A DNA stretch of 64,000 nt from Macrostomum hystrix. Lineage: Eukaryota; Animalia; Platyhelminthes. The stretch spans positions 6,076,001 through 6,140,000 of the forward strand of contig CATNEN010000003.1 of the NCBI GenBank assembly GCA_950097015.1. The letters run 5' to 3'. The notes beneath the pieces are model-generated. The model was not told the origin of the DNA and did no database searches. It saw nothing but the letters and a program-made list of their open reading frames with translations. A program made the position numbers and the translations under genes. Within the stretch, counting starts at the first letter, position 1; each line of letters begins with the position of its first letter. This document shows, in pieces, positions 12,001 through 50,064 of this stretch.

Positions 12001-12451
12001 GGGAAATCTCTAGCTTGTAGATTAGGGAAATCTCTAGTTTGTAGATTAGGGGAAATCTCTAGTTTGTAGATTAGGGAAATCTCTAGCTTGTAGATTGGGG
12101 AAATCTCTTGCTTGTAGATTAGGGAAATCTCTAGTTTGTAGATTAGGGAAATCTCTAGTTCGTATATTGGGGGAAATCTCTAGTTTATAGATTAGGGAAA
12201 TCTCTAGTTTGTAGATTAGGGAAATCTCTAGTTTGTCGATTAGGGAAATCTCTAGTTTGTAGATTAGGGAAATCTCTAGTTTGTAGATTGGGGGAAATCT
12301 CTAGTTTGTAGATTAGGGGAAATCTCTAGTTTGTAGATTAGGGAAATCTCTAGCTTGTAGATTGGGGAAATCTCTTGCTTGTAGATTAGGGAAATCTCTA
12401 GTTTGTAGATTAGGGAAATCTCTAGTTTGTAGATTAGGGAAATCTCTAGTT
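1..12451. repeat. 24-bp satellite (TAGTTTGTAGATTAGGGAAATCTC)n, >12.4 kb, runs off the left edge
   Basis: Directly visible tandem 24-mers with recurrent variants (ATATCTAGC, GGCAAGTC, TTCTAGATTTGG, GGGTGAAA). The ORFs here are 8-aa-periodic artefacts. Confidence 0.99.
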
Positions 12452-29748: not shown

Positions 29749-32536
29749 TCAATCGAAGTCGCTTGCTTGTCCAGTGTGTGTCGTCAGCAAAGACTCTGGC
29801 AGTGTTGCATCGCCATTGATCTTGTGGTCGTCAATGTTTCTGCTATCGACACCGTACTGTTCAGCTAGCTGTTGTTCAATCTGTTGCTGTCTTCTCAGTT
29901 TAGCTCGCCTAGCTGCATTGGCTAAGTCGATGAGAAATTCTAAGACCTCAATAACTCCGAGGAAGCTCACGCCTAACCATAGGCCGATGATGCCGCCAAG
30001 CTCACCTAGAGCCTCCCAGATACTATAAGCTGGCTCCTCCTTGTGTACATTGACCAATACTTCAACTGGGTGCAATTGTAGTTTAACAAAATTTCTATTC
30101 ATTAATTGCACATTGGCCGACCATTCGCCTTCGGAATCAAAGTCGAATAGATCATGAGCCAGCGGCTTGTAGGCTGCCATCGCCGATGAACTAGCGCTAA
30201 AATTTGTTTGTGATAGTCGCAGCGCCGGCAATATGTCGTCCTCGATGATCTCTTGAATGTCCGACTGTCTTGGCCAATTAGCTGAACTATGTACGGCCGT
30301 GTATTCGTTTCTCTGACAGGCGAATTGAGTCTTAGAAGCTCCGTCTGTACATGGCTGATAGCTGTTGTAGTGCGGATCACTGAACTTGTCCAGTACTAGA
30401 TCGTGACAGTTGATTCTATTTAGAAAGCGTTCAACTAGTCTGCGATTAGCAACACTCGGCTGAATTGTCTTTAAACTTAAATCAATTAGTCTAGCTGGAT
30501 CATTCGTGCCTGCTTTGACTGTCTGGCTGATGTCAATGCCTAGATCTAGAAACAAACTGGTGGCATTGTAACACCAACCAACTTTGTCGCCCCTATCAAT
30601 GGCGTCAAACAGCTGATGATATTTTTGCAACGGTACCCGGTGACTAGTGCAGCCGCACTCTTTAAAGACGTCACTCTGTTGAAACGAGTAGACACAGTCT
30701 GCTGGTTCGGCATTGAATTCTCGAAACACGGGCCAACCAGATTCGTCAACGCTGGTTAGAAGCGAAACCTTCGGCTCTGTATCCTCAAGACAAGGTGACG
30801 CAGCTTTGTTTAGCTTGCGCTCTTGGACCATTCCTAAGGGAAAAAGAAACACAATTTTATAAAAGAGCGTAGCAAACATAGTATAGAATTTTGCTGTCTA
30901 GTTTGCACAGCGGGCTCTTAAATTGGACACTGTGCTTTCTGCCGCGCTATTCAGCGACTGCGTCTTTGGTCAACTCGAAAATACACACGTTGGATTTCAA
31001 ATTAGACTGTGGACAGACATTTAGACACTAAGGCGTATGGTTATGCTGATGTATTTCACAGCAATCCATTAATCAATTTTACGGGCAACCGAGCACAACG
31101 AGTATGTAAAATTATGCAGTGTGTAGCTGTTAAAACGTGACCAACACCTTCTCTCCTCCACCGCAGCTAGCAGAAAGTCCTTCATTTGTTCGGAGAGCTT
31201 TCATGGTTCTTAGTTCCACCTCTAGGCAGGGCTTGGCGTCCCCCTTCCAAATCAAAGGCGTGGCAGATGTTGTACACAGAGGTCCCACTGGCGCACCTCT
31301 TTGTCAGGCTTGGAAAACGTGGTCTCTTTTCTCGCCTTATTTTCGCGTATGTTGGATTCTCCATCCACACTTTTTGGGCAGCGAACTTTACAAGCCTGTT
31401 TGAGTTGATTTAACCATAGACAAGTTTTAAGACGTCCAAATGTCTGCCCACTGTCTAGTTTTGCCATAGACGGAAATCGCTGCTTGGCGTCGTAGAAAGC
31501 TCACTGTCCAATTTAAATGCCCGCTGTCCGAACTAGACCCAAAGTTTTAGTTAAGGTATAGAATTGAAAAATCGTACTTGCCTATTTCAACCTCACTGAA
31601 CTGTCCGGCACCAATGATTGAACCAGCTGATCTCAATGCCGGAAATGCGTCCCGCTCGTGGATGACAATTTTCACCCCTGCCGGCTCGTACTCTGGCAGT
31701 AGTAGGCGGGCGAACCAATCATTGTTGTCCAGTTCGCGTTGCCGACCTTTCCGTCGAGTCCGACTAGTTATGGTGGCATTTTCGTCGTACAAATAATTTT
31801 TGTGAGCATTGCCAGTGTACAGTAGCAGCAGTAGGCCGTCCTCTGGTCGAGTAGTTTTAATATTTCTTTCGGATGGTTGAAATGTGTAGCAGTTCATGTA
31901 GTACGGACTCTGTAGCAGTGTGAAGTTCTGTCTACAATCTGTATTGTGATAGCTGCACTTCAGGACTAGCTCATCCAGGGCAAATCCTTTGTGATTAGTT
32001 GGTATTGAAGCGTACTGGTGCTGTATTAGTTTCTTGTGCAATTGTATTTCCTGCTTATAAGGAAGTGAATGTTGCATATTTAATGTCTGGTTATACAACG
32101 GGTACAATAGATAGTCAATAGCCGTGAACCCGTATTGTAGATTCGGAAATGCTACCGTTCCGCGCTCATAAAATCTCGAAGTTGTTGGCGTCTGTGAACA
32201 GATTGTAACGTCGGGAAATTCAAATTCGGCACCCTCGTGATCCAGCGTAATGATGGTTGGCGATTCCAAAAACTGCATTGTGTGAAAAGTCAGATGGATT
32301 ATCGTAGCAATTAGGCCTAGTACAAATACTGTTAACCAAAAGAATCGTCTCTTTGGCGTCTTGGACTGGTGCATGTGCGACAGGCCGTGAATTGTGGTGC
32401 GCTTACAAAAATTTGATACTTGACAATACATAGTCTGGCCGGCGACTCCAACTATCGTTTGCCTTCGTCTTCCGTTAGCAATGTGTTTCATGCTGATACC
32501 GTTGGTACTGCTGTTGTGATTGCTGTAGCTATCCAT
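29749..32536 (-). CDS. DEG/ENaC (amiloride-sensitive Na+ channel family) subunit 1; complement(join(29749-30833, 31582-32536)), about 679 aa
   Basis: TTIHGL (HG motif), TM1 RRFFWLTVFVLGL, FPDVTIC, SPYYMNCYTF, GVKIVIHE, Cys-rich thumb (ECGC...C), SANWP, TM2 LGELGGIIGLWLGVS. The frame is joined by a GC-AG intron. Confidence 0.93.
30908..31526. mobile_element. Internally deleted DNA transposon (probably pogo/Tc1-mariner-like) with about 33-bp imperfect TIRs, inside the ENaC1 intron
   Basis: Left end CAGCGGGCTCTTAAATTGGACACTGTGCTTTCT; right end (reverse complement) CAGCGGGCATTTAAATTGGACAGTGAGCTTTCT. Frameshifted minus-strand remnants RREKRPRFPSL / DKEVRQW resemble a CENP-B-type HTH. No intact TSD. 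Confidence 0.65.
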
Positions 32537-33249: not shown

Positions 33250-34126
33250 ATGGTACGGTTGAAATATCATTAATTTATTTTATTAGGGGCTTATCAAAAT
33301 ATAGTTATTATTACAGTGTCGCACTGCTACGATCACTTCGCTTCTTCAGGATCAGCAACAGAATAATCATCGTAGGCCTTTCTTTGGGCGCCACTGTCAT
33401 CCGTCCTTGCTTGATAAAGATGCTAATACAGCAGCAGCAGCAACAGCTTCAGCCTCAACAGAATCGTCTAGAGGCAATTTTCGCAACTATCAAAATCGAG
33501 GTGGCGGTCGGGGTAGTTATCAAAACTATCGCGGAGGTCGCGGCGGTGGCCGCGGAGGTCGTGGTGGCCGCGGAGGTCGCGGTGGTAGCGCCAGCTACAA
33601 CAATGGCAGTTATCAACGTGGTCCTTATAGGCCGCGTTTACCGCGTCTAAATCGTTTGCGCTGTTCAGTGTGCGATAGTCCGGCCCCAAAGTATCGCTGC
33701 CCTGGCTGCCAGTTAGCGCGCTACTGCTCGACCGCCTGTTGCGCTAAGCACCGAGCCGGATGCGACGCCAAGGAGGAGCGAGAAACTTTGAAATACATAG
33801 CCGAACGACGTCGAAAGCAGTTAGCTGAACAACGCCAGAAGCTTCCACCGCCTGCGCCGTGCACCGAGCTGCTAGATCTGGGCCTTGAGAGCGAAGATTT
33901 TTTGTCGCGCGATAAATTAGCTAAACTTCGACATTGTCCAGAATTGCTAGCCCTATTGGGCCACTCTGAGCTACGCGAGCTGCTAATTGAATTAAATGGC
34001 AGTCGTAGGCCGGAAGTTGATCTGGAGCGGGCGATGCAGTTGCCGCTATTTGTTGAATTCGCAAATGCCTGCTTGGGTGTGGTGGAACCGGCGGCCAATG
34101 ATCGTGCAAACAATGGCGCCAATTAA
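33250..34126 (+). CDS. ZNHIT3: Zinc finger HIT domain protein 3 (box C/D snoRNP assembly factor) with N-terminal RGG-rich extension. Main exon 33317-34126; start uncertain (ATG at 33250-33252 plus a 64-nt intron, or a trans-spliced AUG)
   Basis: zf-HIT CSVC...KYRCPGC...YCSTACCAKH; C-terminal EDFLSRDKLAKL...LRELL...AMQLPLFVEFANACL is typical of ZNHIT3/TRIP3. The frame is open back to the acceptor TTACAG at 33316 and has no ATG before the zinc finger. Confidence 0.88.
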
Positions 34127-35063: not shown

Positions 35064-35649
35064 GTTGAGCTATAGTTCTTTTTTTCCACAAGACCGAGAC
35101 AAGTTGGGGAAAAAAATTAATAAAAATTATAAAAATAATAAAAATAAATCTCGGCTGCGCCTCGGCCGAGAAACAAGTTCTCAGTCGTTCTGACGGCCAC
35201 AGATAAATGAATATACGGGAGAGATTATATAATTATGTCCCTAATTAAGATACTCAATTCGCTAGTTCTTTAGCTCACCAAAAACTAAAATGGGTAACAG
35301 AATGATTTCTTGACAGCTCTATCAATCTATAAATGTTCGGGTTAGTTTACCAAGAATATAAGTGTTTATACTCGCTAAGTATAAATATAGCAAAGTGAAT
35401 CAAATGTTTTAGAGCGATAACAATACATTATAGCTGGATAGTTTTTGTGTTACCTACTTATACGTGACATATGGTGTGAATTATAACAATATAATAGGGT
35501 AGCTTATGATGGACTACAACGTAATATATTTAAGTGCTCAATAGTTATTAGATACGAGAAATGGACTTTTAACTTACGTAAGCCTTTCCCACTGGTCAGG
35601 CTTGAGTTTGACGTTTCTGGTATGTTCCGTTTCTATCTAGCAAGTCTTA

Positions 35650-35937
35650 GTCTGCATCTATCTACCATATCTACCCGTATAATCTGCATCTATCGACCAT
35701 ATCTACCAGTCTGATCTGCATCTATCGACCATATCTACCAGTCTTATCTGCATCTATCTTCCATATCCAGCAGTCTGATCTTTATCTATCTACCATATCT
35801 ACCCGTATAATCTACATCTATCTACCATATCTACCAGTCTGATCTGCATCTATCTACCAAATTTACCAGTCTGATCTGCATCTATCGACCATATCTACCA
35901 GTCTGATCTGCATCTATCGACCATATCTACCAGTCTA
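35650..35937. repeat. 32-bp minisatellite (TCTGCATCTATCGACCATATCTACCAGTCTGA)n
   Basis: Begins about 20 bp after the ENaC2 stop codon (3' UTR side). Confidence 0.9.
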
Positions 35938-35958
35938 ATACTTATAGTTTCTGAACTG

Positions 35959-38900
35959 TCAGCGCTTATTCAACGGCACAGAGTTCTCATCGTCCTCTTG
36001 CTGTCCAATATCTGGTCCATTGCCGCCAGTCGAAGCAGCCACAGCAGCAGCAGCAGCAGCTGTGGCTCGTTTCTGACCAATGCCCCAGCGCCACCAGGTT
36101 AAGATTCGCTTCCAGTAGGACATGCACAGATAGCCAACTAGCTCCAATAGTTCGCAGAAGGTTAGCAAGGATATTCCACACCAGAGTCCGAGTGCTCCGC
36201 CCATCTCTGCTAAAAGATTATTAGCTGTATAGGAGATCTCCTCCTCGGTCATTAGGCCGTGCTCAACTGAGCTGCCAATTGTAATCCAAACCAGATTACT
36301 GCGAGCGGCGTCAATCATCTGTTGCATAGTTTGCACTACGCTGGCATTCTCTGTTGTGAGTATAGACTCAGCCTCCTTGTGAGTGAAGTAGAGCATTGAC
36401 AGGCCCAAATCTGGGCTGACCGTCTTTGGAAAGCCTTTCAGTGTTAGAAGCTTCTGCAGGGTCGTCATGAAGCCGTGATAGAATATGTCCGGCCAGTACT
36501 TGTTGATCTGTAGTTTGGGCAGGGGCAGTTAAAAGACTGGTTTATAAATTTGAGTTCAAGATGTTTGTGACTCCTGACCACACTCACACAGATGCTTGTG
36601 ACTACTGAGCATACTCACGCAGATGTTTATGACTCCTGACCACACTCACACAGATGCTTGTGACTCCTGCGCATACTCACGCAGATGTTTATGACTCCTG
36701 AGCACACTCAGACACATTTTTATGACCCTTGGCCCTGATGTGGAATTAGCTTACTAGAAAATTTATCCTACCTGTCGCTCGGATTACTTGTATTATAAAA
36801 GATATTCTTCCTTGTAATTCTTGAAAATTTTCAAACTAAACTTAAAGGTTAATGTTTGTCAGACGTTTTATTTGATTGTCTAATTATCTATAATTGCTGT
36901 CTACAAGAGGTCCACTAGAACTTATTTCTTTGCACAGACTCTCTTTGATTATCTAATAGTTAGTCGCAGATAGTCGCTTTTACTTTTCATACCGGAAATT
37001 AGTGACATACTTGACAAATCTTAATTATAGTAAGTGCTTGTCTTCTAGAAGTTTCCTTCTGTTCTTTGATTTCTGTGTGCGAGGGAGGAACTGAATAAAA
37101 CCGCAAGAGGTTGAATGTGTAGGAACATTGTAGGAATGTGTAGGAATGTGTAGGAACATACTTATCTCCAGTTTTTTGTAGTCTCAATAAGTCCTAACAA
37201 AAATGGATCGGGATTTCCCATAGCATCTGCGTCTGTTAGAATTATATAGATCCTCGGTGCATACGGAGCGCTCACTCACCTGCTGAATATTGTAGCGTTC
37301 AATTTCGCAACTAGCGGTACAGTGAGTCCAGCCTTCGCTGCTAATGTCCTCTAGACTGTTTATCAAATCCGCTGAGCACGAGTCGTCCTTAATTAATCGC
37401 CTCATCGCCGGACCGTAATCCTCCGTGCCGCTTGTGTTCCATTGGTAGCACCACGGGTATTTCAGGTACTTGGTCGGTATGGGCAGAAAATAGGGCAAGC
37501 ATTCGCATCGTCTAATGAATTTTGTTAGAATATAATCATTGATGCAGGTCTCTTGCGTATTGAGAAATGTCATTGTTAGATTCTTGAATTCTCTGCGGAA
37601 TAAGGGATGAGCAAATGAATGACAAAATGATATTGTTTGTCTTCTATAGTTGCTAGTTAATCGCTTGAAGCTTGGATAAGCTACTTCCTGCAGCTATACA
37701 TAATATCGCATTACATACTCTTGAAGGATACACTGTGAAGCCATGATGAATCGTGCCTTATCAACCGTTTACTTTATCTGCTCGTACTTTTCTAACTTTA
37801 GAATAGATGGCAGTGTCTTGAAAGTATTCGATTTATCAATCTATCAATCTATTTGAAGTAGACACTACAAAAATAGGAAAATAGTTTTCCTACCTATAAA
37901 ACGGATCTAGATTATCCATCGTTTCCGTCAGCTTCACATTAGCCTCATCTGGTTGCCTGTCACTCATTGGCCTACCCTCTGACGACCAGGTGGGTATAAA
38001 ATACTCGACGTATTCTTCATATCTGCCTGTTTTAAACGAGTCCTTGCAATTGGAATCTTTAATAGACACTCGTTTGTTTCTTTCATAGGCCAGTTTAAAC
38101 TCGATGTGACTGCCAGTGTTGGTTGTGTGAGCCAGTCCAATAGCTGGGAAGTGTCCTTTGGGCAAGATGAAGGTGTAGTAGCCGGCCTGACGAAGCTCCT
38201 CGCGACTTGCCGGTCCAGCCACAATGCCTTTGGTGTGCTCATAGCTTGGCGTAGTCTGGCCCTTGTAACTGTGATCGTCGGCAAATAGGCGTATGTTCAA
38301 CTTTCGTCTGGCCTGCTGTTTTGGGCTCAGGCCCTGTAGGAAACGTTCGCTTTTGAACTTGAAGCAGGCACCATAGTAGGGATGATGCACGGTATCGAAG
38401 TCGGCCGATGTGCACTTTACTGAGCCAAAGTGGCAGTCCAGTATCTCCGTCTTGCTCTCGTGGCCCAATAGTTTCGATAATATGTAGGGCTTGTGCTTAA
38501 TGTGCATCACGCCGTATATGCTTTGTATGTTGTTGGCTAAAATACAAGTGTTAGTATTTTGTTTATTTGTAATGGGTTATGTAAGGGTTCTGAGACTAAA
38601 CTCAGAATTTCTATAGTTAATCAAACTCTTAAATTGGTTGGTTTGGCGTCCCCCTAGTCCATGGACTGAACAGCCGTACGCAGCCTTCAGATGCGCTGTG
38701 CAATAGCTGCGGCTATGCTGTCGGCTGCACATCTGACCCAAGTATGGCAGGTGTAATCAATTATTATAAATTATTATAGCTGAGTTTCAACTAATACGAG
38801 CTACGTCATGCTTGTGAAACTTTTTACTCACTAAGAGCAAAATTAAAAGGTTTCACTTCGTTCTGCTCTATTACTTCATTTGGTTGGCTTCACAATTTAT

Positions 38901-40752
38901 TGTGTAGTCTGCTGAAAGCCAATAGCTCAAGCTAAACTGTACAACTAGCTCAAACTGTACAACTGCAGTAGAGTACAACTAGCTCAAACCGCACCCGTAA
39001 TAGCTGGCTGATGTGGTGCAGTGTATATATTATTACCGCAGCTGTGGATTGCGCAGAACTCCTTGCTGATATTGCCGCCTTGACCAGCCACCAGACACCA
39101 TGGTTGATTTTCGATATCGGTTGCGATTTCCTCGCCATCAATGAACAATGTATCGTCGCTTTTCCAATTAGTTCGGTGTGAGCTGTCTCTATAGAGAACT
39201 ACAGCTGAACGGCACATATTCTGCGCCTTCGACAGGTTGTCCATTTCTGGCAGGAACACCTTGTACTCAAAGTTGGCGTTGAGATTTTTGTAGTGCATGT
39301 CGAGCCTCTTGTTCTGCAGATCGTCCCAGTTCAGGCACGGTTTGCCAGACTTTGATATGCTAATATTGCCCATGTAGATTGGCTTGTTTGATTCTTGCGT
39401 AACACATTCCGTCTCCGGTCTATTGTTCATGGCTGAAGTTTGTTGATCAGAATGGTCTACAATTCTTAGGTTAAAATATAAGACCAGGTAGGTTATAAAA
39501 TGTCTTATACTTAAGCTTACCACACACTGGAGTGCCACAATAGTCGTAATCTACGTGGCCAGAATCCGTGCGATGAAAGCAGCCGGGTCCTTGAGACTCA
39601 AATGTAATCGCGTGTATTAAGTTGTTGGTAGTGCCTGCAAATATTTTTTAAAGAAGGGGATAGATAGGTGATACATCGCGATCTTCACTTCTTATTTTTA
39701 AAAGATAATTTTTCACCAAGACCATATTAAAATGTCGATAAGTCGTACCAATAAACGTTTTGAATGCGTGTACAGTCCAGTGATCGAATGGCGGCGTAGC
39801 ACATCTGCTGTGATTCCAATTTGGCGCCAGCTCCGATATATTGTTCATTGGCAGCGAGTTGTTGCTAAACCACTGGCGCAATTCTCGTTTCGCCTGGCTC
39901 CAATTTATACAGCTGACTCGTTTAGTAACTAGGGTCTTTAAATCGTAAACTAGAGCCTGAGAGAAGTCGCCTTCAAATTCTTGACCTGCTAGGGTGTGTC
40001 GGCAGACGGTTAGATCCTCTGAAAGTGGGATTTATTGGTAGATATTTGATTCACTAGAATATGTCAATGATGAGGCTTAAACAGAAAAATGTGCTTTGAA
40101 ATTTTAAGAATAGTTTTATTGTTTGATCTGACTTATGACTTAAGAAAGAAAAAAATGACATTTTAGATAGTTTTTTACCATGGTTATACTGCAGCATTGC
40201 GTCGGTGATGTTTCTTTGCCACTTGATCAGTTCACTATTGAGCGCCTGAACGTGCCTAGTCTCCTTGGGATTTTCAACTTCTTTGCGCAGCATTCTCATG
40301 AAGTCTTGCATGGCCGTGGCTCTGTAGACAATGGCATATCGACCGGTATTACGAATGGCGTTTAACGACTTACTGTAGCTAACCGGATTAGTGTTGCACA
40401 GGTAGATGTCCGGATAGCGAAAATCGATATTGGGATCAAGCTTTGTTGATCGCGGCTGGTTAAAAAATGTGCTAATTAATAGCATTGTGTGAAGAGTTAA
40501 TCCCGTGTAAGCACTGATGATAAACACAATCCAAAGTAGTCGACCCACGTTGCCCCTGGTCGAGGTCGTAAGCCTGGCTATACCGTGGGCCGTTGTGTAG
40601 GCAGCGAAAGCCTTTAAGAAGCTGTTGCCACGCTCTTTTCCGCTGCTGTCTTCTTCGACTAATTGCTCCATGCTGCTCACACTTGGAATCGTTGACAGAG
40701 AGAAAAAAGCTTGAGACCTAGTAGGTCTCTCCGCAGAGATGACGGCTTTCAT
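35959..40752 (-). CDS. DEG/ENaC subunit 2 carrying two extracellular kringle domains; complement(join(35959-36507, 37280-37592, 37894-38536, 39037-39456, 39521-39634, 39749-40018, 40179-40752)), about 960 aa (alternative start at 40671)
   Basis: TTAHGI, TM1 RLLWIVFII, YPDIYLCNTNP, ILDCHFGSVKC, HPYYGACFKF, CECLPYFLP...C, CTASC, KYWP, TM2 LLAEMGGALGLWCGIS. All six introns are GT-AG and the summed exons (2883 nt) keep one open frame. Confidence 0.9.
36558..36725. repeat. Imperfect minisatellite of about 30 bp in the last ENaC2 intron
   Basis: GATGTTTATGACTCCTGACCACACTCACACA-like units, about 5 copies. Confidence 0.75.
38636..38770 (+). mobile_element. SINE family B 3' portion in an ENaC2 intron
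   Basis: GGCGTCCCCTAGTCCATGGACTGAACAGCCGTACGCAGCCTTCAGATGCGC...CAATAGCTGCGGCT is shared with 62314-62385 and 63865-63930. Confidence 0.75.
39038..39406 (-). other. Kringle-like domain 2 (single exon 39037-39456)
   Basis: ECVTQ...YMGNISISKSGKPCLNW...AQNMCRS...QPWCLV...KEFCAIHSC matches the kringle consensus (YxG-x-x-S-x-T/S-x-SGxxCxxW, NxCR, PWC, ExCxIxxC). Confidence 0.9.
39522..40004 (-). other. Kringle-like domain 1, split over exons 39749-40018 and 39521-39634
   Basis: Spliced translation CRHTLAGQEFEGDFS...SCINW...NHSRCATPP...GPGCF...DYDYCGTPVC: six Cys in kringle order with the G-x-x-F/Y-x-G, CxxW, GPxCF and DYCxxPxC motifs. Confidence 0.8.
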
Positions 40753-41174
40753 ATCCGGAATTTTCCCTGCACTGATATGCTGCTCTGTGATTGGTCAGTT
40801 CGGGTAGGAAAAACATTCTGAGTCCACTAGTGGTTGGCTTTTGCCAGCTAACGACTTGGCTTTGAATTCAAGGATTTTTCAAATGCGTACTGAGTAAATG
40901 CGGTTGCGTTAAATAAAAATTAAATTTATGACAGCGCCAAATTCTTTTGACAGGTAATTTGTATAATACTTTGTCTCTTAGTAGATAAATATAAATTATT
41001 TAACGCGTGCAGCCAGTAGATTCTTAGCATGTGAAAAAATTGATTGATGGTTACTTTTTAAATATGATAAACGCATATACCTGTTCGAACTGTGAATTTC
41101 AGAAACGAACAGAATGAGTTTTACGCAATAAATAAAAAAGCCTAAACTAAAGCTGATAAATTTCAATCGACAAG

Positions 41175-44100
41175 ATGGCGACGTCATCTTCGTCGTCTGG
41201 AGACTCGGAACCAGCCCAACAGAGAAGCAATGTGATTGAGGTCAACGACAACAAGGCCGGTATGTCGGGCATTGACAAAGCTCGAATCGGTAAAATAATA
41301 GAAGAGGCCTCCCGCGGCTCCAAGTTCTACCAGCGTCAGGAGGCTAAAAAAGCATCGGACGCGAAACGCGCCGCTGAAACTCGTCGAAAAATCGACGCCT
41401 TATCTAGCGACGCTCTAGCCGCCGGTGAGAAAGCCGGCGACGCGGAGATTCGTCGCGCAATGTCCGGCTCGGATTTTAGTAGAACGCACGTCCATTTAGA
41501 TATGGACGCTTTCTATGCGGCAGTTGAAATGTTGGATAATCCCCGATTGCGTCACGTACCAATGGCTGTTGGCGGCAACGACATGCTGAGTACCAGTAAT
41601 TATGCAGCTAGGCGATTCGGTGTTCGAGCCGCTATGCCAGGGTTCATTGCAAAAAAGCTGTGTCCTCAGCTTGTCATTGTGCCGTGCCGTTTTAAAAGGT
41701 AAGTCTTTAAAGGTAGTTTTAAAAGTCGTTTAAATGTATCCCATAGACACATGCTACCTTTTATCATTCTTATTGCGTGAACTTTGCATAAATCCTCTGC
41801 GAGTATAATATTTCACTCCATAGTCACATGATCCAGTGAATTGAATTTCTCTGGCTTTTTAAGAGGCGCGTTATTTTTCTCACTGTAATCACAGCTTCTC
41901 ACAGTCGCATCTGGATGTCTCTTTGACGCTTCGTAGTGAATTTCCAGGCAAATTTTCTTTAATTCTGCCTTTTCTTGTCACTTGTAATCAATCCACCTTT
42001 TTGCTTTTAAAATTTTATTTGAAGATTGGCAAAACTAGGATGTTTGATCGGATTTTCAAACATTTCAGCGCGTTATAAAATGCTTAACTATGGCCTTCTT
42101 TATCTGACAGGTATAAAGAGGTGAGTCGTCAGGTGCAGGAAGTCTTAGCCGATTACGATCCACAGTTTTCGGCCGCCAGCCTAGATGAAGCCTACCTGGA
42201 TATCACTGATCATTTAACTACTAGGCTGGAGCGAAATATTTTACCTGGCCCTCAGATAACCTGCCAGTGTTCTGGCCAAGCTACTCTTAGTAGTGCGAAC
42301 GCGGCAGTTATTTCTGAAGCGACTTTAAATACCAATTCAAATTCAAACTCGAACGCTTTCTTTGACATTGTGCATTCTGATGAAGATGTGAACCCGGATG
42401 CGACCGCGGATGTATCCAATGACGCTGGTGTACTTCAGGATTCTGTTGCAAAATCTGATGGTAACGATATGATTATTAAATCGGAAGCCCTTGCTAGTGG
42501 CGTGGACTTGTCGAACAATGCCACCGCTGGAACGGACTCAAGAACTCGTGTCTGTCCTGACTGTCATCGCGCGGCACTGGCAGGCCGGCGCGAGTTTGGC
42601 GCCGGTGCCGTCGAAGCCGTGGCCGAGCTTCGCTATCGAGTGTTCCTAGCCACCGGACTGACGGCTAGCGCCGGTATCGGACCGAATCCCATGATCGCTA
42701 AAATTGGATCGGATTTTAACAAACCAAATGGTCAGTATCGAGTCGACAGTAGTCCAGATCGAGTATTGGAATTCATTCGTCCTCTGCCTGTGCGTAAAGT
42801 GCCCGGGATTGGACGCGTTGCCGAGTCATGGCTGTCTAGCCTGGGTGTAGGCACCTGTCGCGAGCTTTACGAGCGTCGCGGCGCACTGTACCACGTCTGC
42901 CGACCGCTGACCTTTCAGTTCTACATGCGGGCCTGCGTTGGTGTTGGCGGCGGTTTTGGCTACGGGGTAAGATGCAAATAAATAGTACTCAAATGTGCTC
43001 TCAGTGGTCCTCTTATGGTTGTGGCTCCATAATTTAATCTTCGAAATCTTCTAATTTTCACACCCTTCCTTGGTGCGCTATTCCTTTGTTGTCCTCTAGA
43101 TTCTCTCTTCGTGCTCATTAGATGTTCTCTTTGTGGTCCTTTCCTTGTGAACTTTGATGTTCTGTTTTTGGTTCTTTTGATGTCCTTTTCTTTGTCATTT
43201 GATGTTCTCTTCGTGGTCATTTGATGTTCTCTTCTTGGTCATTTGATGTTCTCTTCTTGGTCATTTGATGTTCTCTTCTTAGTCATTTGATGTTCTCTTC
43301 TTGGTCAGTTGATGTTATCTTCTTGGTCATTTGATGTTCTCTTCTTGGTCAGTTGATGTTCTCTTCTTGGTAATTTGATGTTCTCTTCTTGGTCATTTGA
43401 TGTTCTCTTCTTAGTAATTTGATGTTCTCTTCTTAGTCATTTGATGTTCTCTTCTTGGTCAGTTGATGTTATCTTCTTGGTCATTTGATGTTCTCTTCTT
43501 GGTCATTTGATGTTCTCTTCTTGGTCATTTGATGTTCTCTTCTTAGTCATTTGATGTTCTCTTCTTGGTCAGTTGATGTTATCTTCTTGGTCATTTGATG
43601 TTCTCTTCTTGGTCAGTTGATGTTCTCTTCTTGGTCATTTGATGTTCTCTTCTTAGTCATTTGATGTTCTCTTCTTGGTCAGTTGATGTTCTCTTCTTGG
43701 TCATTTGATGTTCTCTTCTTGGTCAGTTGATGTTCTCTTCTTGGTCATTTGATGTTCTCTTCTTGGTCAGTTGATGTTCTCTTCTTGGTCATTTGATGTT
43801 CTCTTCTTAGTCATTTGATGTTCTCTTCTTAGTAATTTGATGTTCTCTTCTTAGTCATTTGATGTTCTCTTCTTGGTCAGTTGATGTTCTCTTCTTGGTC
43901 ATTTGATGTTCTCTTCTTGGTCATTTGATGTTCTCTTCTTGGTCATTTGATGTTCTCTTCTTGGTCATTTGATGTTCTCTTCTTGGTCATTTGATGTTCT
44001 CTTCTTGGTCATTTGATGTTCTCTTCTTAGTCATTTGATGTTCTCTTCTTGGTCAGTTGATGTTATCTTCTTGGTCATTTGATGTTCTCTTCTTGGTCAG

Positions 44101-47100
44101 TTGATGTTCTCTTCTTGGTCATTTGATGTTCTCTTCTTAGTAATTTGATGTTCTCTTCTTAGTAATTTGATGTTCTCTTCTTAGTCATTTGATATTCTCT
44201 TCTTAGTAATTTGATGTTCTCTTCTTGGTCAGTTGATGTTATCTTCTTGGTCATTTGATGTTCTCTTCTTAGTAATTTGATGTTCTCTTCTTAGTAATTT
44301 GATGTTCTCTTCTTGGTCAGTTGATGTTCTCTTCTTGGTCATTTGATGTTCTCTTCTTGGTCAGTTGATGTTCTCTTCTTGGTCATTTGATGTTCTCTTC
44401 TTGGTCAGTTGATGTTCTCTTCTTGGTCATTTGATGTTCTCTTCTTAGTAATTTGATGTTCTCTTCTTAGTCATTTGATGTTCTCTTCTTGGTCAGTTGA
44501 TGTTCTCTTCTTGGTCATTTGATGTTCTCTTCTTGGTCATTTGATGTTCTCTTCTTAGTCATTTGATGTTCTCTTCTTAGTCATTTGATGTTCTCTTCTT
44601 GGTCATTTGATGTTCTCTTCTTGGTCAGTTGATGTTCTCTTCTTAGTCATTTGATGTTCTCTTCTTAGTCATTTGATGTTCTCTTCTTGGTCAGTTGATG
44701 TTCTCTTCTTGGTCATTTGATGTTCTCTTCTTGGTCAGTTGATGTTATCTTCTTGGTCATTTGATGTTCTCTTCTTGGTCAGTTGATGTTCTCTTCTTGG
44801 TAATTTGATGTTCTCTTCTTGGTCATTTGATGTTCTCTTCTTAGTAATTTGATGTTCTCTTCTTAGTCATTTGATGTTCTCTTCTTGGTCAGTTGATGTT
44901 ATCTTCTTGGTCATTTGATGTTCTCTTCTTGGTCATTTGATGTTCTTTTCTTGGTCATTTGATGTTCTCTTCTTAGTCATTTGATGTTCTCTTCTTGGTC
45001 AGTTGATGTTATCTTCTTGGTCATTTGATGTTCTCTTCTTGGTCAGTTGATGTTCTCTTCTTGGTCATTTGATGTTCTCTTCTTAGTCATTTGATGTTCT
45101 CTTCTTGGTCAGTTGATGTTCTCTTCTTGGTCATTTGATGTTCTCTTCTTGGTCAGTTGATGTTCTCTTCTTGGTCATTTGATGTTCTCTTCTTGGTCAG
45201 TTGATGTTCTCTTCTTGGTCATTTGATGTTCTCTTCTTAGTCATTTGATGTTCTCTTCTTAGTAATTTGATGTTTTCTTCTTAGTCATTTGATGTTCTCT
45301 TCTTGGTCAGTTGATGTTCTCTTCTTGGTCATTTGATGTTCTCTTCTTGGTCATTTGATGTTCTCTTCTTGGTCATTTGATGTTCTCTTCTTGGTCATTT
45401 GATGTTCTCTTCTTGGTCATTTGATGTTCTCTTCTTGGTCATTTGATGTTCTCTTCTTAGTCATTTGATGTTCTCTTCTTGGTCAGTTGATGTTATCTTC
45501 TTGGTCATTTGATGTTCTCTTCTTGGTCAGTTGATGTTCTCTTCTTGGTCATTTGATGTTCTCTTCTTAGTAATTTGATGTTCTCTTCTTAGTAATTTGA
45601 TGTTCTCTTCTTAGTCATTTGATATTCTCTTCTTAGTAATTTGATGTTCTCTTCTTGGTCAGTTGATGTTATCTTCTTGGTCATTTGATGTTCTCTTCTT
45701 AGTAATTTGATGTTCTCTTCTTAGTAATTTGATGTTCTCTTCTTGGTCAGTTGATGTTCTCTTCTTGGTCATTTGATGTTCTCTTCTTGGTCAGTTGATG
45801 TTCTCTTCTTGGTCATTTGATGTTCTCTTCTTGGTCAGTTGATGTTCTCTTCTTGGTCATTTGATGTTCTCTTCTTAGTAATTTGATGTTCTCTTCTTAG
45901 TCATTTGATGTTCTCTTCTTGGTCAGTTGATGTTCTCTTCTTGGTCATTTGATGTTCTCTTCTTGGTCATTTGATGTTCTCTTCTTAGTCATTTGATGTT
46001 CTCTTCTTAGTCATTTGATGTTCTCTTCTTGGTCATTTGATGTTCTCTTCTTGGTCAGTTGATGTTCTCTTCTTAGTCATTTGATGTTCTCTTCTTAGTC
46101 ATTTGATGTTCTCTTCTTGGTCAGTTGATGTTCTCTTCTTGGTCATTTGATGTTCTCTTCTTAGTCATTTGATGTTCTCTTCTTAGTCATTTGATGTTCT
46201 CTTCTTAGTAATTTGATGTTCTCTTCTTGGTCATTTGATGTTCTCTTCTTAGTCATTTGATGTTCTCTTCTTGGTCAGTTGATGTTCTCTTCTTGGTCAT
46301 TTGATGTTCTCTTCTTAGTCATTTGATGTTCTCTTCTTAGTCATTTGATGTTCTCTTCTTAGTAATTTGATGTTCTCTTCTTGGTCATTTGATGTTCTCT
46401 TCTTAGTCATTTGATGTTCTCTTCTTAGTAATTTGATGTTCTCTTCTTGGTCATTTGATGTTCTCTTCTTAGTAATTTGATGTTCTCTTCTTAGTCATTT
46501 GATGTTCTCTTCTTAGTAATTTGATGTTCTCTTCTTAGTCATTTGATGTTCTCTTCTTAGTCATTTGATGTTCTCTTCTTAGTCATTTGATGTTCTCTTC
46601 TTGGTCATTTGATGTTCTCTTCTTGGTCAGTTGATGTTCTCTTCTTGGTCATTTGATGTTCTCTTCTTGGTCAGTTGATGTTCTCTTCTTGGTCATTTGA
46701 TGTTCTCTTCTTAGTCATTTGATGTTCTCTTCTTAGTAATTTGATGTTCTCTTCTTAGTCATTTGATGTTCTCTTCTTGGTCAGTTGATGTTCTCTTCTT
46801 GGTCATTTGATGTTCTCTTCTTGGTCATTTGATGTTCTCTTCTTGGTCATTTGATGTTCTCTTCTTGGTCATTTGATGTTCTCTTCTTGGTCATTTGATG
46901 TTCTCTTCTTGGTCATTTGATGTTCTCTTCTTAGTCATTTGATGTTCTCTTCTTGGTCAGTTGATGTTATCTTCTTGGTCATTTGATGTTCTCTTCTTGG
47001 TCAGTTGATGTTCTCTTCTTGGTCATTTGATGTTCTCTTCTTAGTAATTTGATGTTCTCTTCTTAGTAATTTGATGTTCTCTTCTTAGTCATTTGATATT

Positions 47101-49767
47101 CTCTTCTTAGTAATTTGATGTTCTCTTCTTGGTCAGTTGATGTTATCTTCTTGGTCATTTGATGTTCTCTTCTTAGTAATTTGATGTTCTCTTCTTAGTA
47201 ATTTGATGTTCTCTTCTTGGTCAGTTGATGTTCTCTTCTTGGTCATTTGATGTTCTCTTCTTGGTCAGTTGATGTTCTCTTCTTGGTCATTTGATGTTCT
47301 CTTCTTGGTCAGTTGATGTTCTCTTCTTGGTCATTTGATGTTCTCTTCTTAGTAATTTGATGTTCTCTTCTTAGTCATTTGATGTTCTCTTCTTGGTCAG
47401 TTGATGTTCTCTTCTTGGTCATTTGATGTTCTCTTCTTGGTCATTTGATGTTCTCTTCTTAGTCATTTGATGTTCTCTTCTTAGTCATTTGATGTTCTCT
47501 TCTTGGTCATTTGATGTTCTCTTCTTGGTCAGTTGATGTTCTCTTCTTAGTCATTTGATGTTCTCTTCTTAGTCATTTGATGTTCTCTTCTTGGTCAGTT
47601 GATGTTCTCTTCTTGGTCATTTGATGTTCTCTTCTTAGTCATTTGATGTTCTCTTCTTAGTCATTTGATGTTCTCTTCTTAGTAATTTGATGTTCTCTTC
47701 TTGGTCATTTGATGTTCTCTTCTTAGTCATTTGATGTTCTCTTCTTGGTCAGTTGATGTTCTCTTCTTGGTCATTTGATGTTCTCTTCTTAGTCATTTGA
47801 TGTTCTCTTCTTAGTCATTTGATGTTCTCTTCTTAGTAATTTGATGTTCTCTTCTTGGTCATTTGATGTTCTCTTCTTAGTCATTTGATGTTCTCTTCTT
47901 AGTAATTTGATGTTCTCTTCTTGGTCATTTGATGTTCTCTTCTTAGTAATTTGATGTTCTCTTCTTAGTCATTTGATGTTCTCTTCTTAGTAATTTGATG
48001 TTCTCTTCTTAGTCATTTGATGTTCTCTTCTTAGTCATTTGATGTTCTCTTCTTAGTCATTTGATGTTCTCTTCTTGGTCATTTGATGTTCTCTTCTTGG
48101 TCAGTTGATGTTCTCTTCTTGGTCATTTGATGTTCTCTTCTTGGTCAGTTGATGTTCTCTTCTTGGTCATTTGATGTTCTCTTCTTAGTCATTTGATGTT
48201 CTCTTCTTAGTAATTTGATGTTCTCTTCTTAGTCATTTGATGTTCTCTTCTTGGTCAGTTGATGTTATCTTCTTGGTCATTTGATGTTCTCTTCTTAGTC
48301 ATTTGATGTTCTCTTCTTGGTCATTTGATGTTCTCTTCTTGGTCAGTTGATGTTATCTTCTTGGTCATTTGATGTTCTCTTCTTGGTCAGTTGATGTTAT
48401 CTTCTTGGTCATTTGATGTTCTCTTCTTGGTCAGTTGATGTTCTCTTCTTGGTCATTTGATGTTCTCTTCTTAGTCATTTGATGTTCTCTTCTTAGTAAT
48501 TTGATGTTCTCTATGTGGTCATTTGATGTTCTCTTCGTGGTCATTTGATGTTCTCTTCTTGGTCAGTTGATGTTCTCTTCGTTCGCCGTAGTTGACAAAC
48601 GCTTCGTGACGCACATCGTGTTATTAATACTCTGGCCTCTAAATATTCCTGGACACGTCATGTCGAAAAATTCTTTCGGATGTTTTAGGTGTGACTCGGG
48701 ATAAGAACGTACAGAGCTCGTATTAACTTTCTCGTATTTAGCGTTCTTGCAAATTTTCCTATCTAAAATTATACTTCAAATTCTATCACTTGCAGCGCTC
48801 CGATCAACCATCAGATCAATCGGCAGCCAACGACACCGAGTCAGATCGTAAAAGTGTCAGCGTTGAACGAACCTTTCAAACAACCGACAATGTCGCATGG
48901 CTGATTGATGAAAAACTGCCAGAATTGTGTGATACACTTGTCAGACATTTAAACAAAGCTGGCATGGTTGGCCGAACTGTTACTCTCAAACTGAAGTTAG
49001 ATAGCTTCGAAGTGTTGACTCGAAGTCACGGCCTACCGTCGGCGACAGATTCCGTTGAAGCTATTCGAGCCGCCGCGGCGGCCCTCATTCGTCAGGAATT
49101 TCCTCCGGGTCGACCGCCGCCTCGAGTTCGCCTCCTTGGCGTGCGATTGTCGTCTCTGACTTGCAGCAGTAGCGCCGGTGTCGGTACATCGAAACAGGCT
49201 CGACTGGATGATTTGCTGATCAAAGCGACAAGGTCTACTAATGATGTCGATTTCGAAGATGATTCACAGACTTCATCGACGTCCATATTGGCATCGGCTT
49301 CGACGTCGAAAGCTTCAACGTCTAAAGTAGAATCGAATTCGACGTCGAAAGTAGCATCAAATTTGATGTCAAAAGTTACATCGGCACAGACTTCAACGTC
49401 GGCATCTTTGGCAAGCGCTAGTAACGTCAGTTCGAATGACAACGACGATACATTGCATTGTCCAGTCTGTTCTTTACCTCAGTCGGGCGGTCTTGTCAGT
49501 CTGAATCGGCATTTAGATTTTTGTTTGAGTCGATCAGCGATTCAAACGGCAGTTAATGATTTTTCCAACGAATCTTTGCCGCCAGGATCGGCACTGGTAT
49601 CGATCAGTGCGCCGCCTACTGTTAGTAGTAGGAAACGCGTTGAAACTTCCGCCGCCACGAACGTTACTTCCAGCGGCAGCGGTGTTAGCAATCAAGCCAA
49701 ACGTTCAAAGATTAACGGACGTGGTGCGACAATTGATCGATTCTTTGTTAAATCGAAGCCTGAATGA
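41175..49767 (+). CDS. POLK: DNA polymerase kappa (Y-family, DinB); join(41175-41698, 42111-42966, 48796-49767), about 783 aa
   Basis: N-clasp [12 protein letters not shown]...GSKFY; catalytic [32 protein letters not shown]; TASAGI...SDFNKPNGQ; [10 protein letters not shown]; VRLLGVRLS; UBZ4 CPVC...LNRHLDFCL; C-terminal PIP box TIDRFF. Splice phases are consistent. Confidence 0.97.
43195..48580. repeat. 22-bp satellite (ATTTGATGTTCTCTTCTTGGTC)n, about 5.4 kb, in POLK intron 2
   Basis: Visible array with higher-order period of about 1.43-1.47 kb. Confidence 0.99.
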
Positions 49768-50064
49768 TGACCGAATACCTTATCTTGAAGTAGCATTTTA
49801 AGCCATTTAAATGACATTGTGTCACTCAAGGAAGAATTAAATAAAACAATGTCAGCATTTTACTTAAGGTTACTTAATATTATATTTTTATTCAGAATAA
49901 AAGTACATTTACTGCGCATCGATTCGCATTTACTTCTATTTTATTGTTGAAATTAAAAAACTTCATTCTTTTCATACAACTTTTGAAAGATCCATTTTTT
50001 ATCTAAAACTAGCTTCATTACTTAAACTGGACTTATATTCGTTACTAATAACCTAGAACTTTAG

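What the first reader, a model, noticed from the sequence alone, without database searches (positions are those of the whole stretch)
35959..40752. DEG/ENaC ion channel with two kringle domains inserted in its extracellular finger region
Seen: hand-splicing seven GT-AG exons gives one open frame of about 960 aa with all DEG/ENaC landmarks (HG, TM1, YPDIYLCN, Cys-rich thumb, GxS filter in TM2). About 268 aa between the post-TM1 helices and ILDCHFGSVKC form two six-cysteine kringle modules. Known: the finger is the most variable DEG/ENaC region and carries the gating inputs (the protease-released inhibitory tract in ENaC, the peptide site in FaNaC). Kringles are protein-binding modules of plasminogen, HGF, ROR and Kremen. 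I do not know of a characterised kringle-bearing DEG/ENaC. Inference: a channel gated or tethered by an extracellular protein ligand, matrix component or recruited protease, displaying up to six kringles per homotrimer.
Basis: partly seen in the sequence, partly recalled or inferred. Interest (0 to 1): 0.92.

Follow-up and report, generated by a model that had tools for sequence, protein, structure and literature searches.

The report
Sodium channel with two built-in kringles
A flatworm (Macrostomum-type) gene for a DEG/ENaC sodium channel really does carry three extra exons that place two kringle-type modules in the channel's outer "finger"; the design is conserved in relatives but is described in no paper I could find, and its mRNA and function are untested.

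Summary
On the minus strand, seven GT-AG exons (40752-35959) give one 960-codon frame. Exons 1, 5, 6 and 7 each match the DEG/ENaC profile (ASC, PF00858) above its cut-off, in order, with profile positions 98-141 missing. That gap holds exons 2-4 (268 aa, 12 Cys).

- **Kringle 2 (exon 4):** secure. Pfam 32.6 bits (cut-off 34.3), only kringle chains among PDB hits, and profile-profile probability 98%.
- **Kringle 1 (exons 2+3):** divergent. No Pfam hit, but probability 92%, far above shuffles.
- **One gene:** all three exons are phase 1-1. M. lignano gene models join exon 1 to 2 and exon 4 to 5. Two paralogs on another contig keep the same seven exons and intron phases. The kringle exons are as conserved (80-82%) as the channel exons (78-87%).
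- **Gaps:** no RNA run was listed, both structure models were poor, and function is inferred only.

Other agents of this scan reported kringle-WSC-kringle channels elsewhere in this genome. I confirmed one and found the same exon order at six more loci. In those genes the WSC exon sits in the intron that splits kringle 1 here. This gene and its two close paralogs lack it.

Verdict: a new variant of a known kind.

The parts
40179..40752 (-). Exon 1: start codon, cytoplasmic N-terminus with the HG motif, TM1, the YPDIYLCN post-TM1 motif and the first finger helices. It ends in phase 1.
   Evidence: ASC profile 1-98, E 6e-13. Aligns to FaNaC, ENaC-gamma and ASIC1 N-terminus/TM1. Hydrophobic segment 69-94 and HG at 56. 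M. lignano model P0034 joins its end to exon 2.
39749..40018 (-). Exon 2 (270 nt, phase 1-1): first part of kringle 1, Cys 1-3.
   Evidence: No Pfam hit alone. 80% identical to M. lignano P0001. Homologous exons lie in the same order in the two C39 paralogs. There is no ATG between the upstream in-frame stop and the exon start.
39521..39634 (-). Exon 3 (114 nt, phase 1-1): second part of kringle 1, Cys 4-6 (GPGCF...YDYCGTPVC).
   Evidence: 58% identical to the matching part of M. lignano P0003. Conserved in both C39 paralogs. With exon 2, hhalign to a canonical kringle profile gives probability 92%, E 6.7e-7 and score 37.7. Column shuffles gave 9.8 +/- 1.8, with a maximum of 14.6.
39037..39456 (-). 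Exon 4 (420 nt, phase 1-1): short linker plus the whole of kringle 2 (six Cys), with a long Cys3-Cys4 loop.
   Evidence: Pfam Kringle E 1e-7, 32.6 bits. All 11 PDB sequence hits are kringle chains, prothrombin and HGF. hhalign to the kringle profile gives probability 98.1% and E 1.4e-13 over all 76 columns. Of 33 hits in 1.84 billion representatives, 3 are M. lignano kringle-ASC models. Of the other 30, 29 were scanned with Pfam: 27 carry Kringle and none carries ASC.
37894..38536 (-). Exon 5: last finger helix, the ILDCHFGSVKC motif, beta-ball and palm.
   Evidence: ASC profile 141-283. Aligns to alpha-ENaC 278-311 and ASIC1 151-204. 87% identical to P0001.
37280..37592 (-). Exon 6: cysteine-rich thumb region.
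   Evidence: ASC profile 295-372. Seven Cys. 86% identical to P0001.
35959..36507 (-). Exon 7: lower palm/wrist, TM2 with the G-I-S filter, C-terminus and stop.
   Evidence: ASC profile 398-455, E 3.7e-11. Hydrophobic segment 105-129 and GIS at 111. The junction ...NIQQ|INKYWPD is identical in P0001.

Best explanation
This is a real, intact seven-exon gene of a Macrostomum-type flatworm. It encodes a 960-aa DEG/ENaC channel subunit. Its extracellular finger carries a 268-aa arm made of two tandem, divergent kringle modules.

Shown here:
- The channel core has all the family landmarks.
- The arm is encoded by three phase 1-1 exons sitting in a phase-1 intron of the channel. This is the classic signature of exon shuffling.
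- The arm is conserved in order, cysteines and intron phases in an M. lignano ortholog, in two paralogs on another contig, and (with a WSC exon added inside kringle 1) in at least seven more genes.

Inferred:
- The subunit assembles as a trimeric, amiloride-family cation channel.
- The glycosylated kringle pair projects from the top and outer face of the ectodomain as a docking arm for an extracellular protein or glycoprotein (matrix, cuticle/mucus component or secreted ligand).
- Because the arm is spliced into the finger, the region that moves against the thumb during gating in ASIC, ENaC and FaNaC, occupancy or pull on it would modulate or trigger opening.

The binding mode is probably not the plasminogen-type lysine pocket.
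For: - **Frame and splice sites:**
- **ASC in E1, E5, E6 and E7, in order, with a gap at profile 98-141:**
- **Landmarks and two TM segments:**
- **Kringle 2:**
- **Kringle 1:**
- **M. lignano models:** they join E1|E2, E4|E5, E5|E6 and E6|E7 at or near the same points.
- **Conservation versus the ortholog:** kringle exons 80-82% identical, channel exons 78-87%.
- **C39 paralogs:** they keep all seven exons in order, with consensus splice sites giving the same phases 1,1,1,1,2,0. dN/dS between them is below 1 in E2-E4.
- **No separate gene:** there is no start codon before E2 and no stop after E4 in frame.
- **Internal control:** the adjacent DEG/ENaC gene in the window (29749-32536) has profile 1-261 uninterrupted in one ORF.
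- **Finger position:**
- **Wider family with a WSC exon at the E2|E3 intron:**
Against:
- **Exon 3 missing in the ortholog models:** both M. lignano ortholog models skip the exon-3 equivalent. This could be an annotation error or a real isoform.
- **In-frame skipping is possible:** skipping E2-E4 together, or any one of them, keeps the frame, so a kringle-less isoform cannot be excluded.
- **Weak family scores:** Kringle 2 is 1.7 bits under Pfam's cut-off. Kringle 1 has no Pfam or PDB sequence hit.
- **No structural support:** both AlphaFold models were poor (pLDDT 61 and 49) and matched no fold.
- **Unusual loops:** both modules have Cys3-Cys4 loops about 25 residues longer than standard kringles.
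- **Function:** nothing here tests function.
Confidence: 0.8

Rival explanations
1. The kringle exons are a regulated cassette. The gene makes both a plain channel (E1 joined to E5) and an arm-bearing one, or forms lacking single exons such as E3.
For: E2, E3 and E4 are all phase 1-1 and multiples of 3 (270, 114, 420 nt), so any combination can be skipped in frame. Both M. lignano ortholog models lack the exon-3 equivalent.
Against: No RNA data either way. The M. lignano models are automatic and otherwise faulty: P0034 fuses two genes. Exon 3 keeps its three cysteines and 58% identity to the paralog, and dN is 0 between the C39 copies, so it is under constraint as coding sequence.
Confidence: 0.3
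2. Only one true kringle is present. The E2+E3 module is a different or degenerate cysteine-rich domain that merely resembles a kringle.
For: No Pfam hit for E2 or E3. No PDB sequence hit for the K1 region of P0003. K1 versus K2 profile comparison is weak, with probability 5.6%. The AlphaFold model is uninformative.
Against: hhalign of K1 against a canonical kringle profile gives probability 92% and score 37.7, against a maximum of 14.6 in 60 column shuffles and 10.5 for the reversed alignment. There are six Cys in kringle order, with G-x-E-F-x-G, C-x-x-W, GPxCF and YxYCGxPxC motifs at the cognate places. MAFFT lays K2 rows and canonical kringles onto K1 with Cys 1, 2, 4, 5 and 6 in register.
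Confidence: 0.12
3. The arm has no role in gating. It serves folding, trafficking, clustering or protection of the channel, or is a lineage-specific ornament under weak constraint.
For: No functional data. The acidic lysine-pocket residues are not kept (sequence inspection). Three M. lignano DEG/ENaCs tested in oocytes gave no response to the peptides applied (PMC9234716), although I do not know whether any of them carried an arm.
Against: The arm is as conserved as the channel core between species and is kept in at least ten genes. Its insertion point is the finger, where I recall ENaC's protease-released tract and FaNaC's peptide site lying (mapping).
Confidence: 0.25
4. Exons 2-4 belong to a separate nested gene, or the locus is a non-functional pseudogene and the long frame is fortuitous.
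For: No transcript evidence.
Against: There is no start codon or signal peptide ahead of E2, no stop after E4, and matching phases on both sides. M. lignano models read through E1|E2 and E4|E5. No in-frame stop occurs in 960 codons. Identity to the ortholog is 78-87% in every exon. The same colinear exons occur in the paralogs.
Confidence: 0.04

Closest known systems
M. lignano predicted proteins A0A1I8FXR6 (P0001) and UPI0007A2262D (P0034): ortholog; A0A1I8G9S9 (P0003) and A0A1I8GPM0 (P0004): paralogs
   Same: Same kringle-in-ASC architecture. 78-87% identity for the ortholog, with the same exon joins. UniProt's automatic name is already 'Kringle domain-containing protein'.
   Different: All are fragments or chimeras. 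None is full length and the ortholog models lack exon 3. None is characterised or discussed in any paper I could search.
Kringle-WSC-kringle DEG/ENaC genes of the same genome (C25:5.15-5.20 Mb, C39:12.02 Mb, C30:3.63 Mb; earlier findings s1-402470, s1-402504 and others)
   Same: Homologous arm at the same finger position. E1-like, E2-like, E3-like and E5-like exons lie in the same order, with E6- and E7-like exons also seen where the fetched stretch reached that far. These are the nearest relatives of exon 5 in the genome.
   Different: They carry a WSC exon (PF01822, E 8.9e-11) between the E2-like and E3-like exons, that is, inside kringle 1. The window gene has only a 114-nt intron there and no WSC. 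On an exon-5 tree the three WSC-less genes group together (support 82/78), but the order of gain or loss is unresolved.
ENaC alpha/gamma subunits with the GRIP domain
   Same: A lineage-specific module spliced into the finger of a DEG/ENaC subunit, at about the same stretch (E5 30-63 aligns to alpha-ENaC 278-311). By my recollection, the GRIP module controls gating.
   Different: From what I recall, GRIP is a beta-strand module with protease-released inhibitory tracts and is not a kringle. I looked for no furin-type sites here.
FaNaC (FMRFamide-gated channel)
   Same: Best PDB sequence match of exon 1. From what I recall of the published structures, its finger insertions form the ligand site.
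   Different: It has no kringle, and its ligand is a tetrapeptide. M. lignano relatives near FaNaC did not respond to peptides (PMC9234716).
Kremen1/2, ROR1/2, MuSK (membrane proteins with a single extracellular kringle)
   Same: The kringle is used as an extracellular interaction module on a membrane protein. Kremen also pairs a kringle with WSC, as the sister genes here do. ROR2 kringle chains appear among profile hits.
   Different: Those are single-pass receptors with the kringle in a linear domain string. Here two kringles are inserted within a channel's ectodomain.
C. elegans MEC-4/MEC-10 degenerins
   Same: DEG/ENaC channels thought to be coupled to extracellular matrix proteins, with extra cysteine-rich ectodomain regions (from my knowledge of the literature).
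   Different: Their matrix partners (MEC-1, MEC-5, MEC-9) are separate proteins. No kringle is built into the channel.

Membership tests
DEG/ENaC (ASC, PF00858) | Profile match above the curated cut-off across the whole ectodomain and both TM regions | tested here: met
   E1 49 bits, E5 28.5, E6 24.8 and E7 43.2 against a cut-off of 23.6. Profile order is 1-98, 141-283, 295-372, 398-455. The test was run exon by exon, and the joined protein was not submitted.
DEG/ENaC (ASC, PF00858) | Two transmembrane helices flanking a large cysteine-rich ectodomain | tested here: met
   There are exactly two hydrophobic 19-mer segments: E1 69-94 and E7 105-129. The 26 Cys of E2-E6 lie between them, plus one in E1 (YPDIYLCN) after TM1. 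E1 aligns with TM1 of solved channels, and E7 matches the ASC profile's TM2 end, 398-455.
DEG/ENaC (ASC, PF00858) | HG motif before TM1 and G-x-S selectivity filter in TM2 | tested here: met
   HG at E1 residue 56 (TTAHGIARL) and G-I-S at E7 residue 111 within LGLWCGISLLTFCELLE.
DEG/ENaC (ASC, PF00858) | Trimeric assembly and amiloride-sensitive cation conduction | not testable with these tools
   Needs expression and recording.
Kringle (PF00051): module 2, exon 4 | Profile match above the curated cut-off | tested here: inconclusive
   32.6 bits against a cut-off of 34.3, E 1e-7, in two stretches. The long Cys3-Cys4 loop splits the match.
Kringle (PF00051): module 2, exon 4 | Homology to bona fide kringles by independent searches | tested here: met
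   hhalign gives probability 98.1% and E 1.4e-13 over all 76 template columns. All 11 PDB hits are kringle chains. Of the 30 non-Macrostomum hits in 1.84 billion representatives, 29 were scanned with Pfam and 27 carry Kringle.
Kringle (PF00051): module 2, exon 4 | Six cysteines in kringle order, with the Y-x-G, SG-x-x-C-x-x-W, N-x-CR, PWC and C-x-x-x-x-C motifs | tested here: met
   All are present and conserved in the rows that reach them (the window gene, the two C39 paralogs and M. lignano P0001; P0004 and P0035 start after Cys 1 and P0003 ends before Cys 4). Disulfide pairing itself was not tested.
Kringle (PF00051): module 1, exons 2+3 | Profile match or homology to bona fide kringles | tested here: inconclusive
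   No Pfam hit for E2, E3 or the intact module in P0003, and no PDB sequence hit. hhalign to a canonical kringle profile gives probability 92%, E 6.7e-7 and score 37.7, against a shuffle maximum of 14.6.
Kringle (PF00051): both modules | Kringle fold (three-disulfide, triple-loop) | tested here: inconclusive
   AlphaFold2 of exon 4 gave pLDDT 61 with no Foldseek hit at E<=0.001 and best VIA Z of 3.8. AlphaFold2 of P0003 gave pLDDT 48.8. The models are too poor to judge.
Lysine-binding kringles (plasminogen type) | Acidic pair after Cys3 (C-R-N-P-D-x-D) with flanking aromatic residues | tested here: not met
   Module 2 reads C-R-S-A-V-V-L and module 1 reads C-A-T-P-P-F-D. The identity of the pocket residues is from my knowledge of plasminogen kringles.

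The most novel reading that the evidence does not exclude
The kringle pair (and the kringle-WSC-kringle arm of the sister genes) is a built-in receptor or tether that converts binding of, or pull from, an extracellular protein or glycan directly into finger movement. That would be a new gating modality for DEG/ENaC channels: gating by a macromolecular ligand, or a channel with its own matrix tether. It would have expanded into a family of ten or more genes in Macrostomum.
Probability: 0.25. Interest if true: 0.85.

Novelty: new variant of a known kind. Interest (0 to 1): 0.62.

Why it matters
DEG/ENaC channels are opened by protons, small peptides, proteases or force. How force or macromolecules reach the gate is a long-standing question. 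A channel that carries its own protein-interaction modules in the finger is a natural experiment on that question. The arm can be removed in frame (E1 to E5), swapped between paralogs with and without WSC, and used as bait. From my knowledge of the literature, Macrostomum lignano is a laboratory model with RNAi, transgenesis and in situ methods.

The locus is also a clean example of exon shuffling. Three phase 1-1 exons sit in a phase-1 intron, and in sister genes a fourth domain (WSC) is dropped into the intron that splits kringle 1.

If the arm turns out not to affect gating, the finding is a lineage-specific curiosity.

Tried and rejected
- **Joined protein:** All searches were exon by exon, by reference, or used database proteins.
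- **Structure:** AlphaFold2 of exon 4 with a 7-row alignment gave pLDDT 61. Foldseek against the PDB and VIA-align wide gave nothing meaningful. AlphaFold2 of P0003 with 18 rows, including nine canonical kringles of this genome, gave pLDDT 48.8. These are no verdict on the fold.
- **Word-index protein searches:** The search for homologous proteins with P0001, exon 4 and P0003 found only M. lignano proteins or nothing. The tool is length- and word-limited, so this does not bound the taxonomic range.
- **ESM Atlas:** it gave only plain ASC clusters at scores below 0.9.
- **Acceptor at 39464:** rejected because it puts a TAG in frame.
- **Nested-gene and pseudogene readings:** rejected (see rivals).
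- **Possible large inserts elsewhere:** ASC hits at C38:28.87 Mb, C38:29.06 Mb and C7:2.49 Mb looked like big inserts in the genome search table. On reading they were ordinary multi-exon genes.
- **Pfam kringle search of the genome:** it did not list this locus or any ASC-linked locus. The channel-borne kringles are too divergent for that screen.
- **dN/dS for exon 1 of the C39 pair:** unreliable because of an indel, so it was ignored.
- **Exon-5 tree:** it could not polarise WSC gain against loss.

Full report
**Gene model.** Reading 35800-40900 on the minus strand and locating the junctions by script gives seven exons:
- E1 40752-40179
- E2 40018-39749
- E3 39634-39521
- E4 39456-39037
- E5 38536-37894
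- E6 37592-37280
- E7 36507-35959

All introns begin with GT and end with AG. Their lengths are 160, 114, 64, 500, 301 and 772 nt. An acceptor at 39464 would give an in-frame TAG, so the frame-keeping acceptor is 39456. Intron phases are 1, 1, 1, 1, 2, 0. Everything below was done exon by exon, by reference, or with database proteins.

**Channel core.** Pfam scans of the seven exon translations give ASC (PF00858) above its 23.6-bit cut-off in four exons:
- E1: profile 1-98, 49 bits
- E5: profile 141-283, 28.5 bits
- E6: profile 295-372, 24.8 bits
- E7: profile 398-455, 43.2 bits

The hits are in order. Profile positions 98-141 are missing exactly where E2-E4 lie. There are exactly two hydrophobic segments (E1 69-94, E7 105-129). 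The HG motif is at E1 residue 56, and G-I-S lies in the second segment within LGLWCGISLLTFCELLE. E1 aligns to TM1 and the post-TM1 strand of FaNaC, ENaC-gamma and ASIC1, up to about ASIC1 residue 113-122. E5 residues 13-64 align to human ASIC1 151-204, and residues 30-63 to alpha-ENaC 278-311. The insert therefore lies within the finger. By my recollection this is the stretch where ENaC carries its GRIP domain.

The neighbouring DEG/ENaC gene in the same window (29749-32536, minus strand) has profile 1-261 uninterrupted in a single ORF. It serves as an internal control without the insert.

**The insert.** E2 (89 in-frame codons), E3 (37) and E4 (139) carry 3 + 3 + 6 cysteines and seven N-x-S/T sequons.

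*Kringle 2 (E4).*
- Pfam gives Kringle at E 1e-7 and 32.6 bits, 1.7 bits under the cut-off. The match is split in two by a long Cys3-Cys4 loop.
- All 11 PDB sequence hits are kringle chains (prothrombin kringle 2 and HGF). Both the Y-x-G...C-x-x-W part and the PWC...C part align at the cognate places.
- An exhaustive phmmer run against 1.84 billion representatives gives 33 hits. Three are M. lignano proteins that also carry ASC. Of the other 30, 29 were scanned with Pfam (P0024 was too long for the tool). 27 carry Kringle and none carries ASC. None of the 30 shows similarity to the channel exons by phmmer.
- A profile of the family's kringle 2 against a profile of 98 canonical kringles gives hhalign probability 98.1% and E 1.4e-13 over all 76 template columns.

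*Kringle 1 (E2+E3).*
- There is no Pfam or PDB sequence hit, either as separate exons or intact in M. lignano P0003.
- It has six cysteines in kringle order. The motifs G-x-E-F-x-G, C-x-x-W, N-H-S-R-C, GPGCF and YDYCGTPVC sit at the expected places.
- Its family alignment scores probability 92%, E 6.7e-7 and score 37.7 against the canonical kringle profile. Sixty column shuffles gave 9.8 +/- 1.8 (maximum 14.6), and the reversed alignment gave 10.5.
- MAFFT also lays K2 rows and canonical kringles of this genome onto K1 with Cys 1, 2, 4, 5 and 6 in register.

I put K1 at about 88% a true, divergent kringle. In both modules the Cys3-Cys4 loop is about 25 residues longer than usual. Neither module keeps the acidic pair that I recall forming the plasminogen-type lysine pocket.

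Both AlphaFold2 attempts were poor: exon 4 gave pLDDT 61, and P0003 gave pLDDT 48.8. Foldseek and VIA-align gave nothing meaningful. The fold is therefore untested rather than refuted.

**Is it one gene?** Several independent lines say yes.
1. E2, E3 and E4 are all phase 1-1 and sit in a phase-1 position of the channel gene. There is no ATG between the upstream in-frame stop and E2, and no stop at the end of E4.
2. The best database hit, P0001, is UniProt A0A1I8FXR6 of Macrostomum lignano, automatically named 'Kringle domain-containing protein'. Its cluster mate is P0034. These models read ...LQYNH-E-DLTICRH (E1|E2)...HSC-A-NNIQSIYG (E4|E5) and ...NIQQ|INKYWPD (E6|E7), at the same points as my model.
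3. Identity to P0001 is 80% (E2) and 82% (E4), against 87%, 86% and 78% for E5, E6 and E7. The kringle exons are therefore as constrained as the channel exons.
4. The same genome has two tandem paralogs on contig C39 (10.38 Mb). All seven exons lie in the same order at 31-54% identity. Consensus splice sites at homologous points give the same phases. dN/dS between the two copies is 0.30, 0 and 0.53 for E2, E3 and E4 (small counts).
5. M. lignano P0003 (N-terminus, TM1, complete K1 and part of K2) and P0004 (K2 plus mid-channel) are orthologs of these paralogs. They again join arm and channel.

There are caveats. Both M. lignano ortholog models skip the exon-3 equivalent, and P0034 is a chimera with the downstream gene. 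That chimera does show conserved synteny with the window's neighbour gene. Because every arm exon is symmetric, in-frame skipping of E3, or of E2-E4 together, is possible and untested.

**Wider family.** The search of earlier findings showed that other agents of this scan had reported DEG/ENaC genes with a kringle-WSC-kringle arm elsewhere in this genome. I tested that lead.
- The nine best genomic matches to exon 5 are all exon-sized frames. They lie at C3 (this gene), C39:10.38 Mb (two), C39:12.02 Mb (two), C25:5.16-5.19 Mb (three) and C30:3.64 Mb.
- At C25:5.152-5.170 Mb the order is E1-like, E2-like, a WSC exon (PF01822, E 8.9e-11, 42.3 bits), E3-like, K2-like, E5-, E6- and E7-like.
- The same E1 / E2-like / WSC / E3-like / E5 order recurs at C25 (three more copies, one of them cut at the edge of the fetched stretch), C39:12.02 Mb (two) and C30.

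In the sister genes, the WSC exon therefore sits in the very intron that splits kringle 1 here. In the window gene that intron is only 114 nt and holds no WSC. A profile of this subfamily's K2 finds only three loci in the genome. On an exon-5 tree the three WSC-less genes group together (82/78) and the C25 genes group together (90/92). The root and the order of WSC gain or loss are unresolved. The tree had eleven rows, used only the exon-5 equivalent, and left no rows out.

**Novelty.** Full-text searches for kringle with pickpocket, degenerin or acid-sensing ion channel, and for Macrostomum with ENaC, found no paper describing a kringle-bearing DEG/ENaC. One paper tested three M. lignano DEG/ENaCs near the FaNaC branch and saw no response to the peptides applied (PMC9234716). 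It does not mention kringles. The architecture exists in UniProt only as fragmentary, automatically named M. lignano models. Word-index searches and the ESM Atlas found nothing outside M. lignano. Those tools are too limited to bound the taxonomic range.

**Mechanism.**

*Shown:* a canonical DEG/ENaC core with a conserved, glycosylation-rich, disulfide-rich two-kringle arm in the finger.

*Inferred from family knowledge:*
- The channel is a trimer, so it would display up to six kringles.
- The finger moves against the thumb during gating and hosts the regulatory inputs of ENaC and FaNaC.
- Kringles are protein-interaction modules.

My best reading is a docking arm for an extracellular protein or glycoprotein that tethers or modulates the channel. 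It is unlikely to use a plasminogen-type lysine pocket. I put this functional reading at about 40-45%. A purely structural or trafficking role gets about 25%. The architecture itself gets about 85%.

**Verdict.** This is a new variant of a known kind, found repeatedly by this scan in sister genes of the same genome. Interest: 0.62.

Noticed in passing
window 29749-32536 (-): A tandem DEG/ENaC paralog just downstream. It has at least two exons (ORFs 31547-32536 and 29749-30879), with ASC profile 1-261 and 297-455 and no kringle insert. Its M. lignano ortholog is fused to the kringle-channel ortholog in model P0034, so the gene order is conserved.
   Followed up: partly
window 41175-49767 (+): A Y-family DNA polymerase (IMS, IMS_HHH and IMS_C domains; polymerase-kappa-like by eye) lies head to head with the channel gene, 422 bp from start codon to start codon. 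A 5.4-kb array of a 22-bp unit (43153-48580, about 247 copies) sits between its coding ORFs, apparently in an intron.
   Followed up: partly
window 1-12451, 19210-26487, 50053-52565 and about 15 smaller arrays: Minisatellite arrays with 14-30 bp units (24 bp x 517, 23 bp x 316, 30 bp x 82 and others) fill roughly 40% of the window and cause the strong GC and AT skews. One 32-bp array (35634-35936) starts 23 bp after the channel's stop codon.
   Followed up: no
window 33407-34126 (+): An ORF with zf-HIT and ZNHIT3_C domains (ZNHIT3-like) lies between the two channel genes.
   Followed up: no
G000 genome-wide: DEG/ENaC is greatly expanded. There are 518 first-look candidates, and the 93 candidates scored gave 100 matches at E<=0.01. 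Most of the best ones are full-length ASC in a single open frame (apparently intronless), unlike the seven-exon kringle-bearing clade.
   Followed up: no
G000 genome-wide, e.g. C1:8.45-8.50 Mb, C7:5.91-5.94 Mb, C39:10.68-10.70 Mb: The WSC domain is also greatly expanded (436 candidates, 150 strong hits). Many lie in long tandem runs with 0.4-1.7 kb spacing, which look like multi-WSC genes.
   Followed up: no
G000 C38:9498977-9509508 (+), L001-L003, L007, L009-L011: A cluster of at least twelve canonical kringle exons within 11 kb, probably one multi-kringle gene. It is a possible source pool for shuffled kringle exons.
   Followed up: no
L022:3-3671 (+) and L023:3-2358 (+) (G000 C25:5.152-5.164 Mb): A 1223-aa open frame that looks like a non-LTR retrotransposon ORF2 (by eye, not scanned) lies upstream of a kringle-WSC-kringle channel gene. 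Further long unidentified ORFs, possibly transposon-derived, lie in that gene's K2-to-E5 intron.
   Followed up: no
L027:7300-7935 and L028:2027-2389 (G000 C25): The exon-5-like matches of two C25 kringle-WSC-kringle copies contain in-frame stops when read straight through. This may mean an extra intron or a decayed copy.
   Followed up: no
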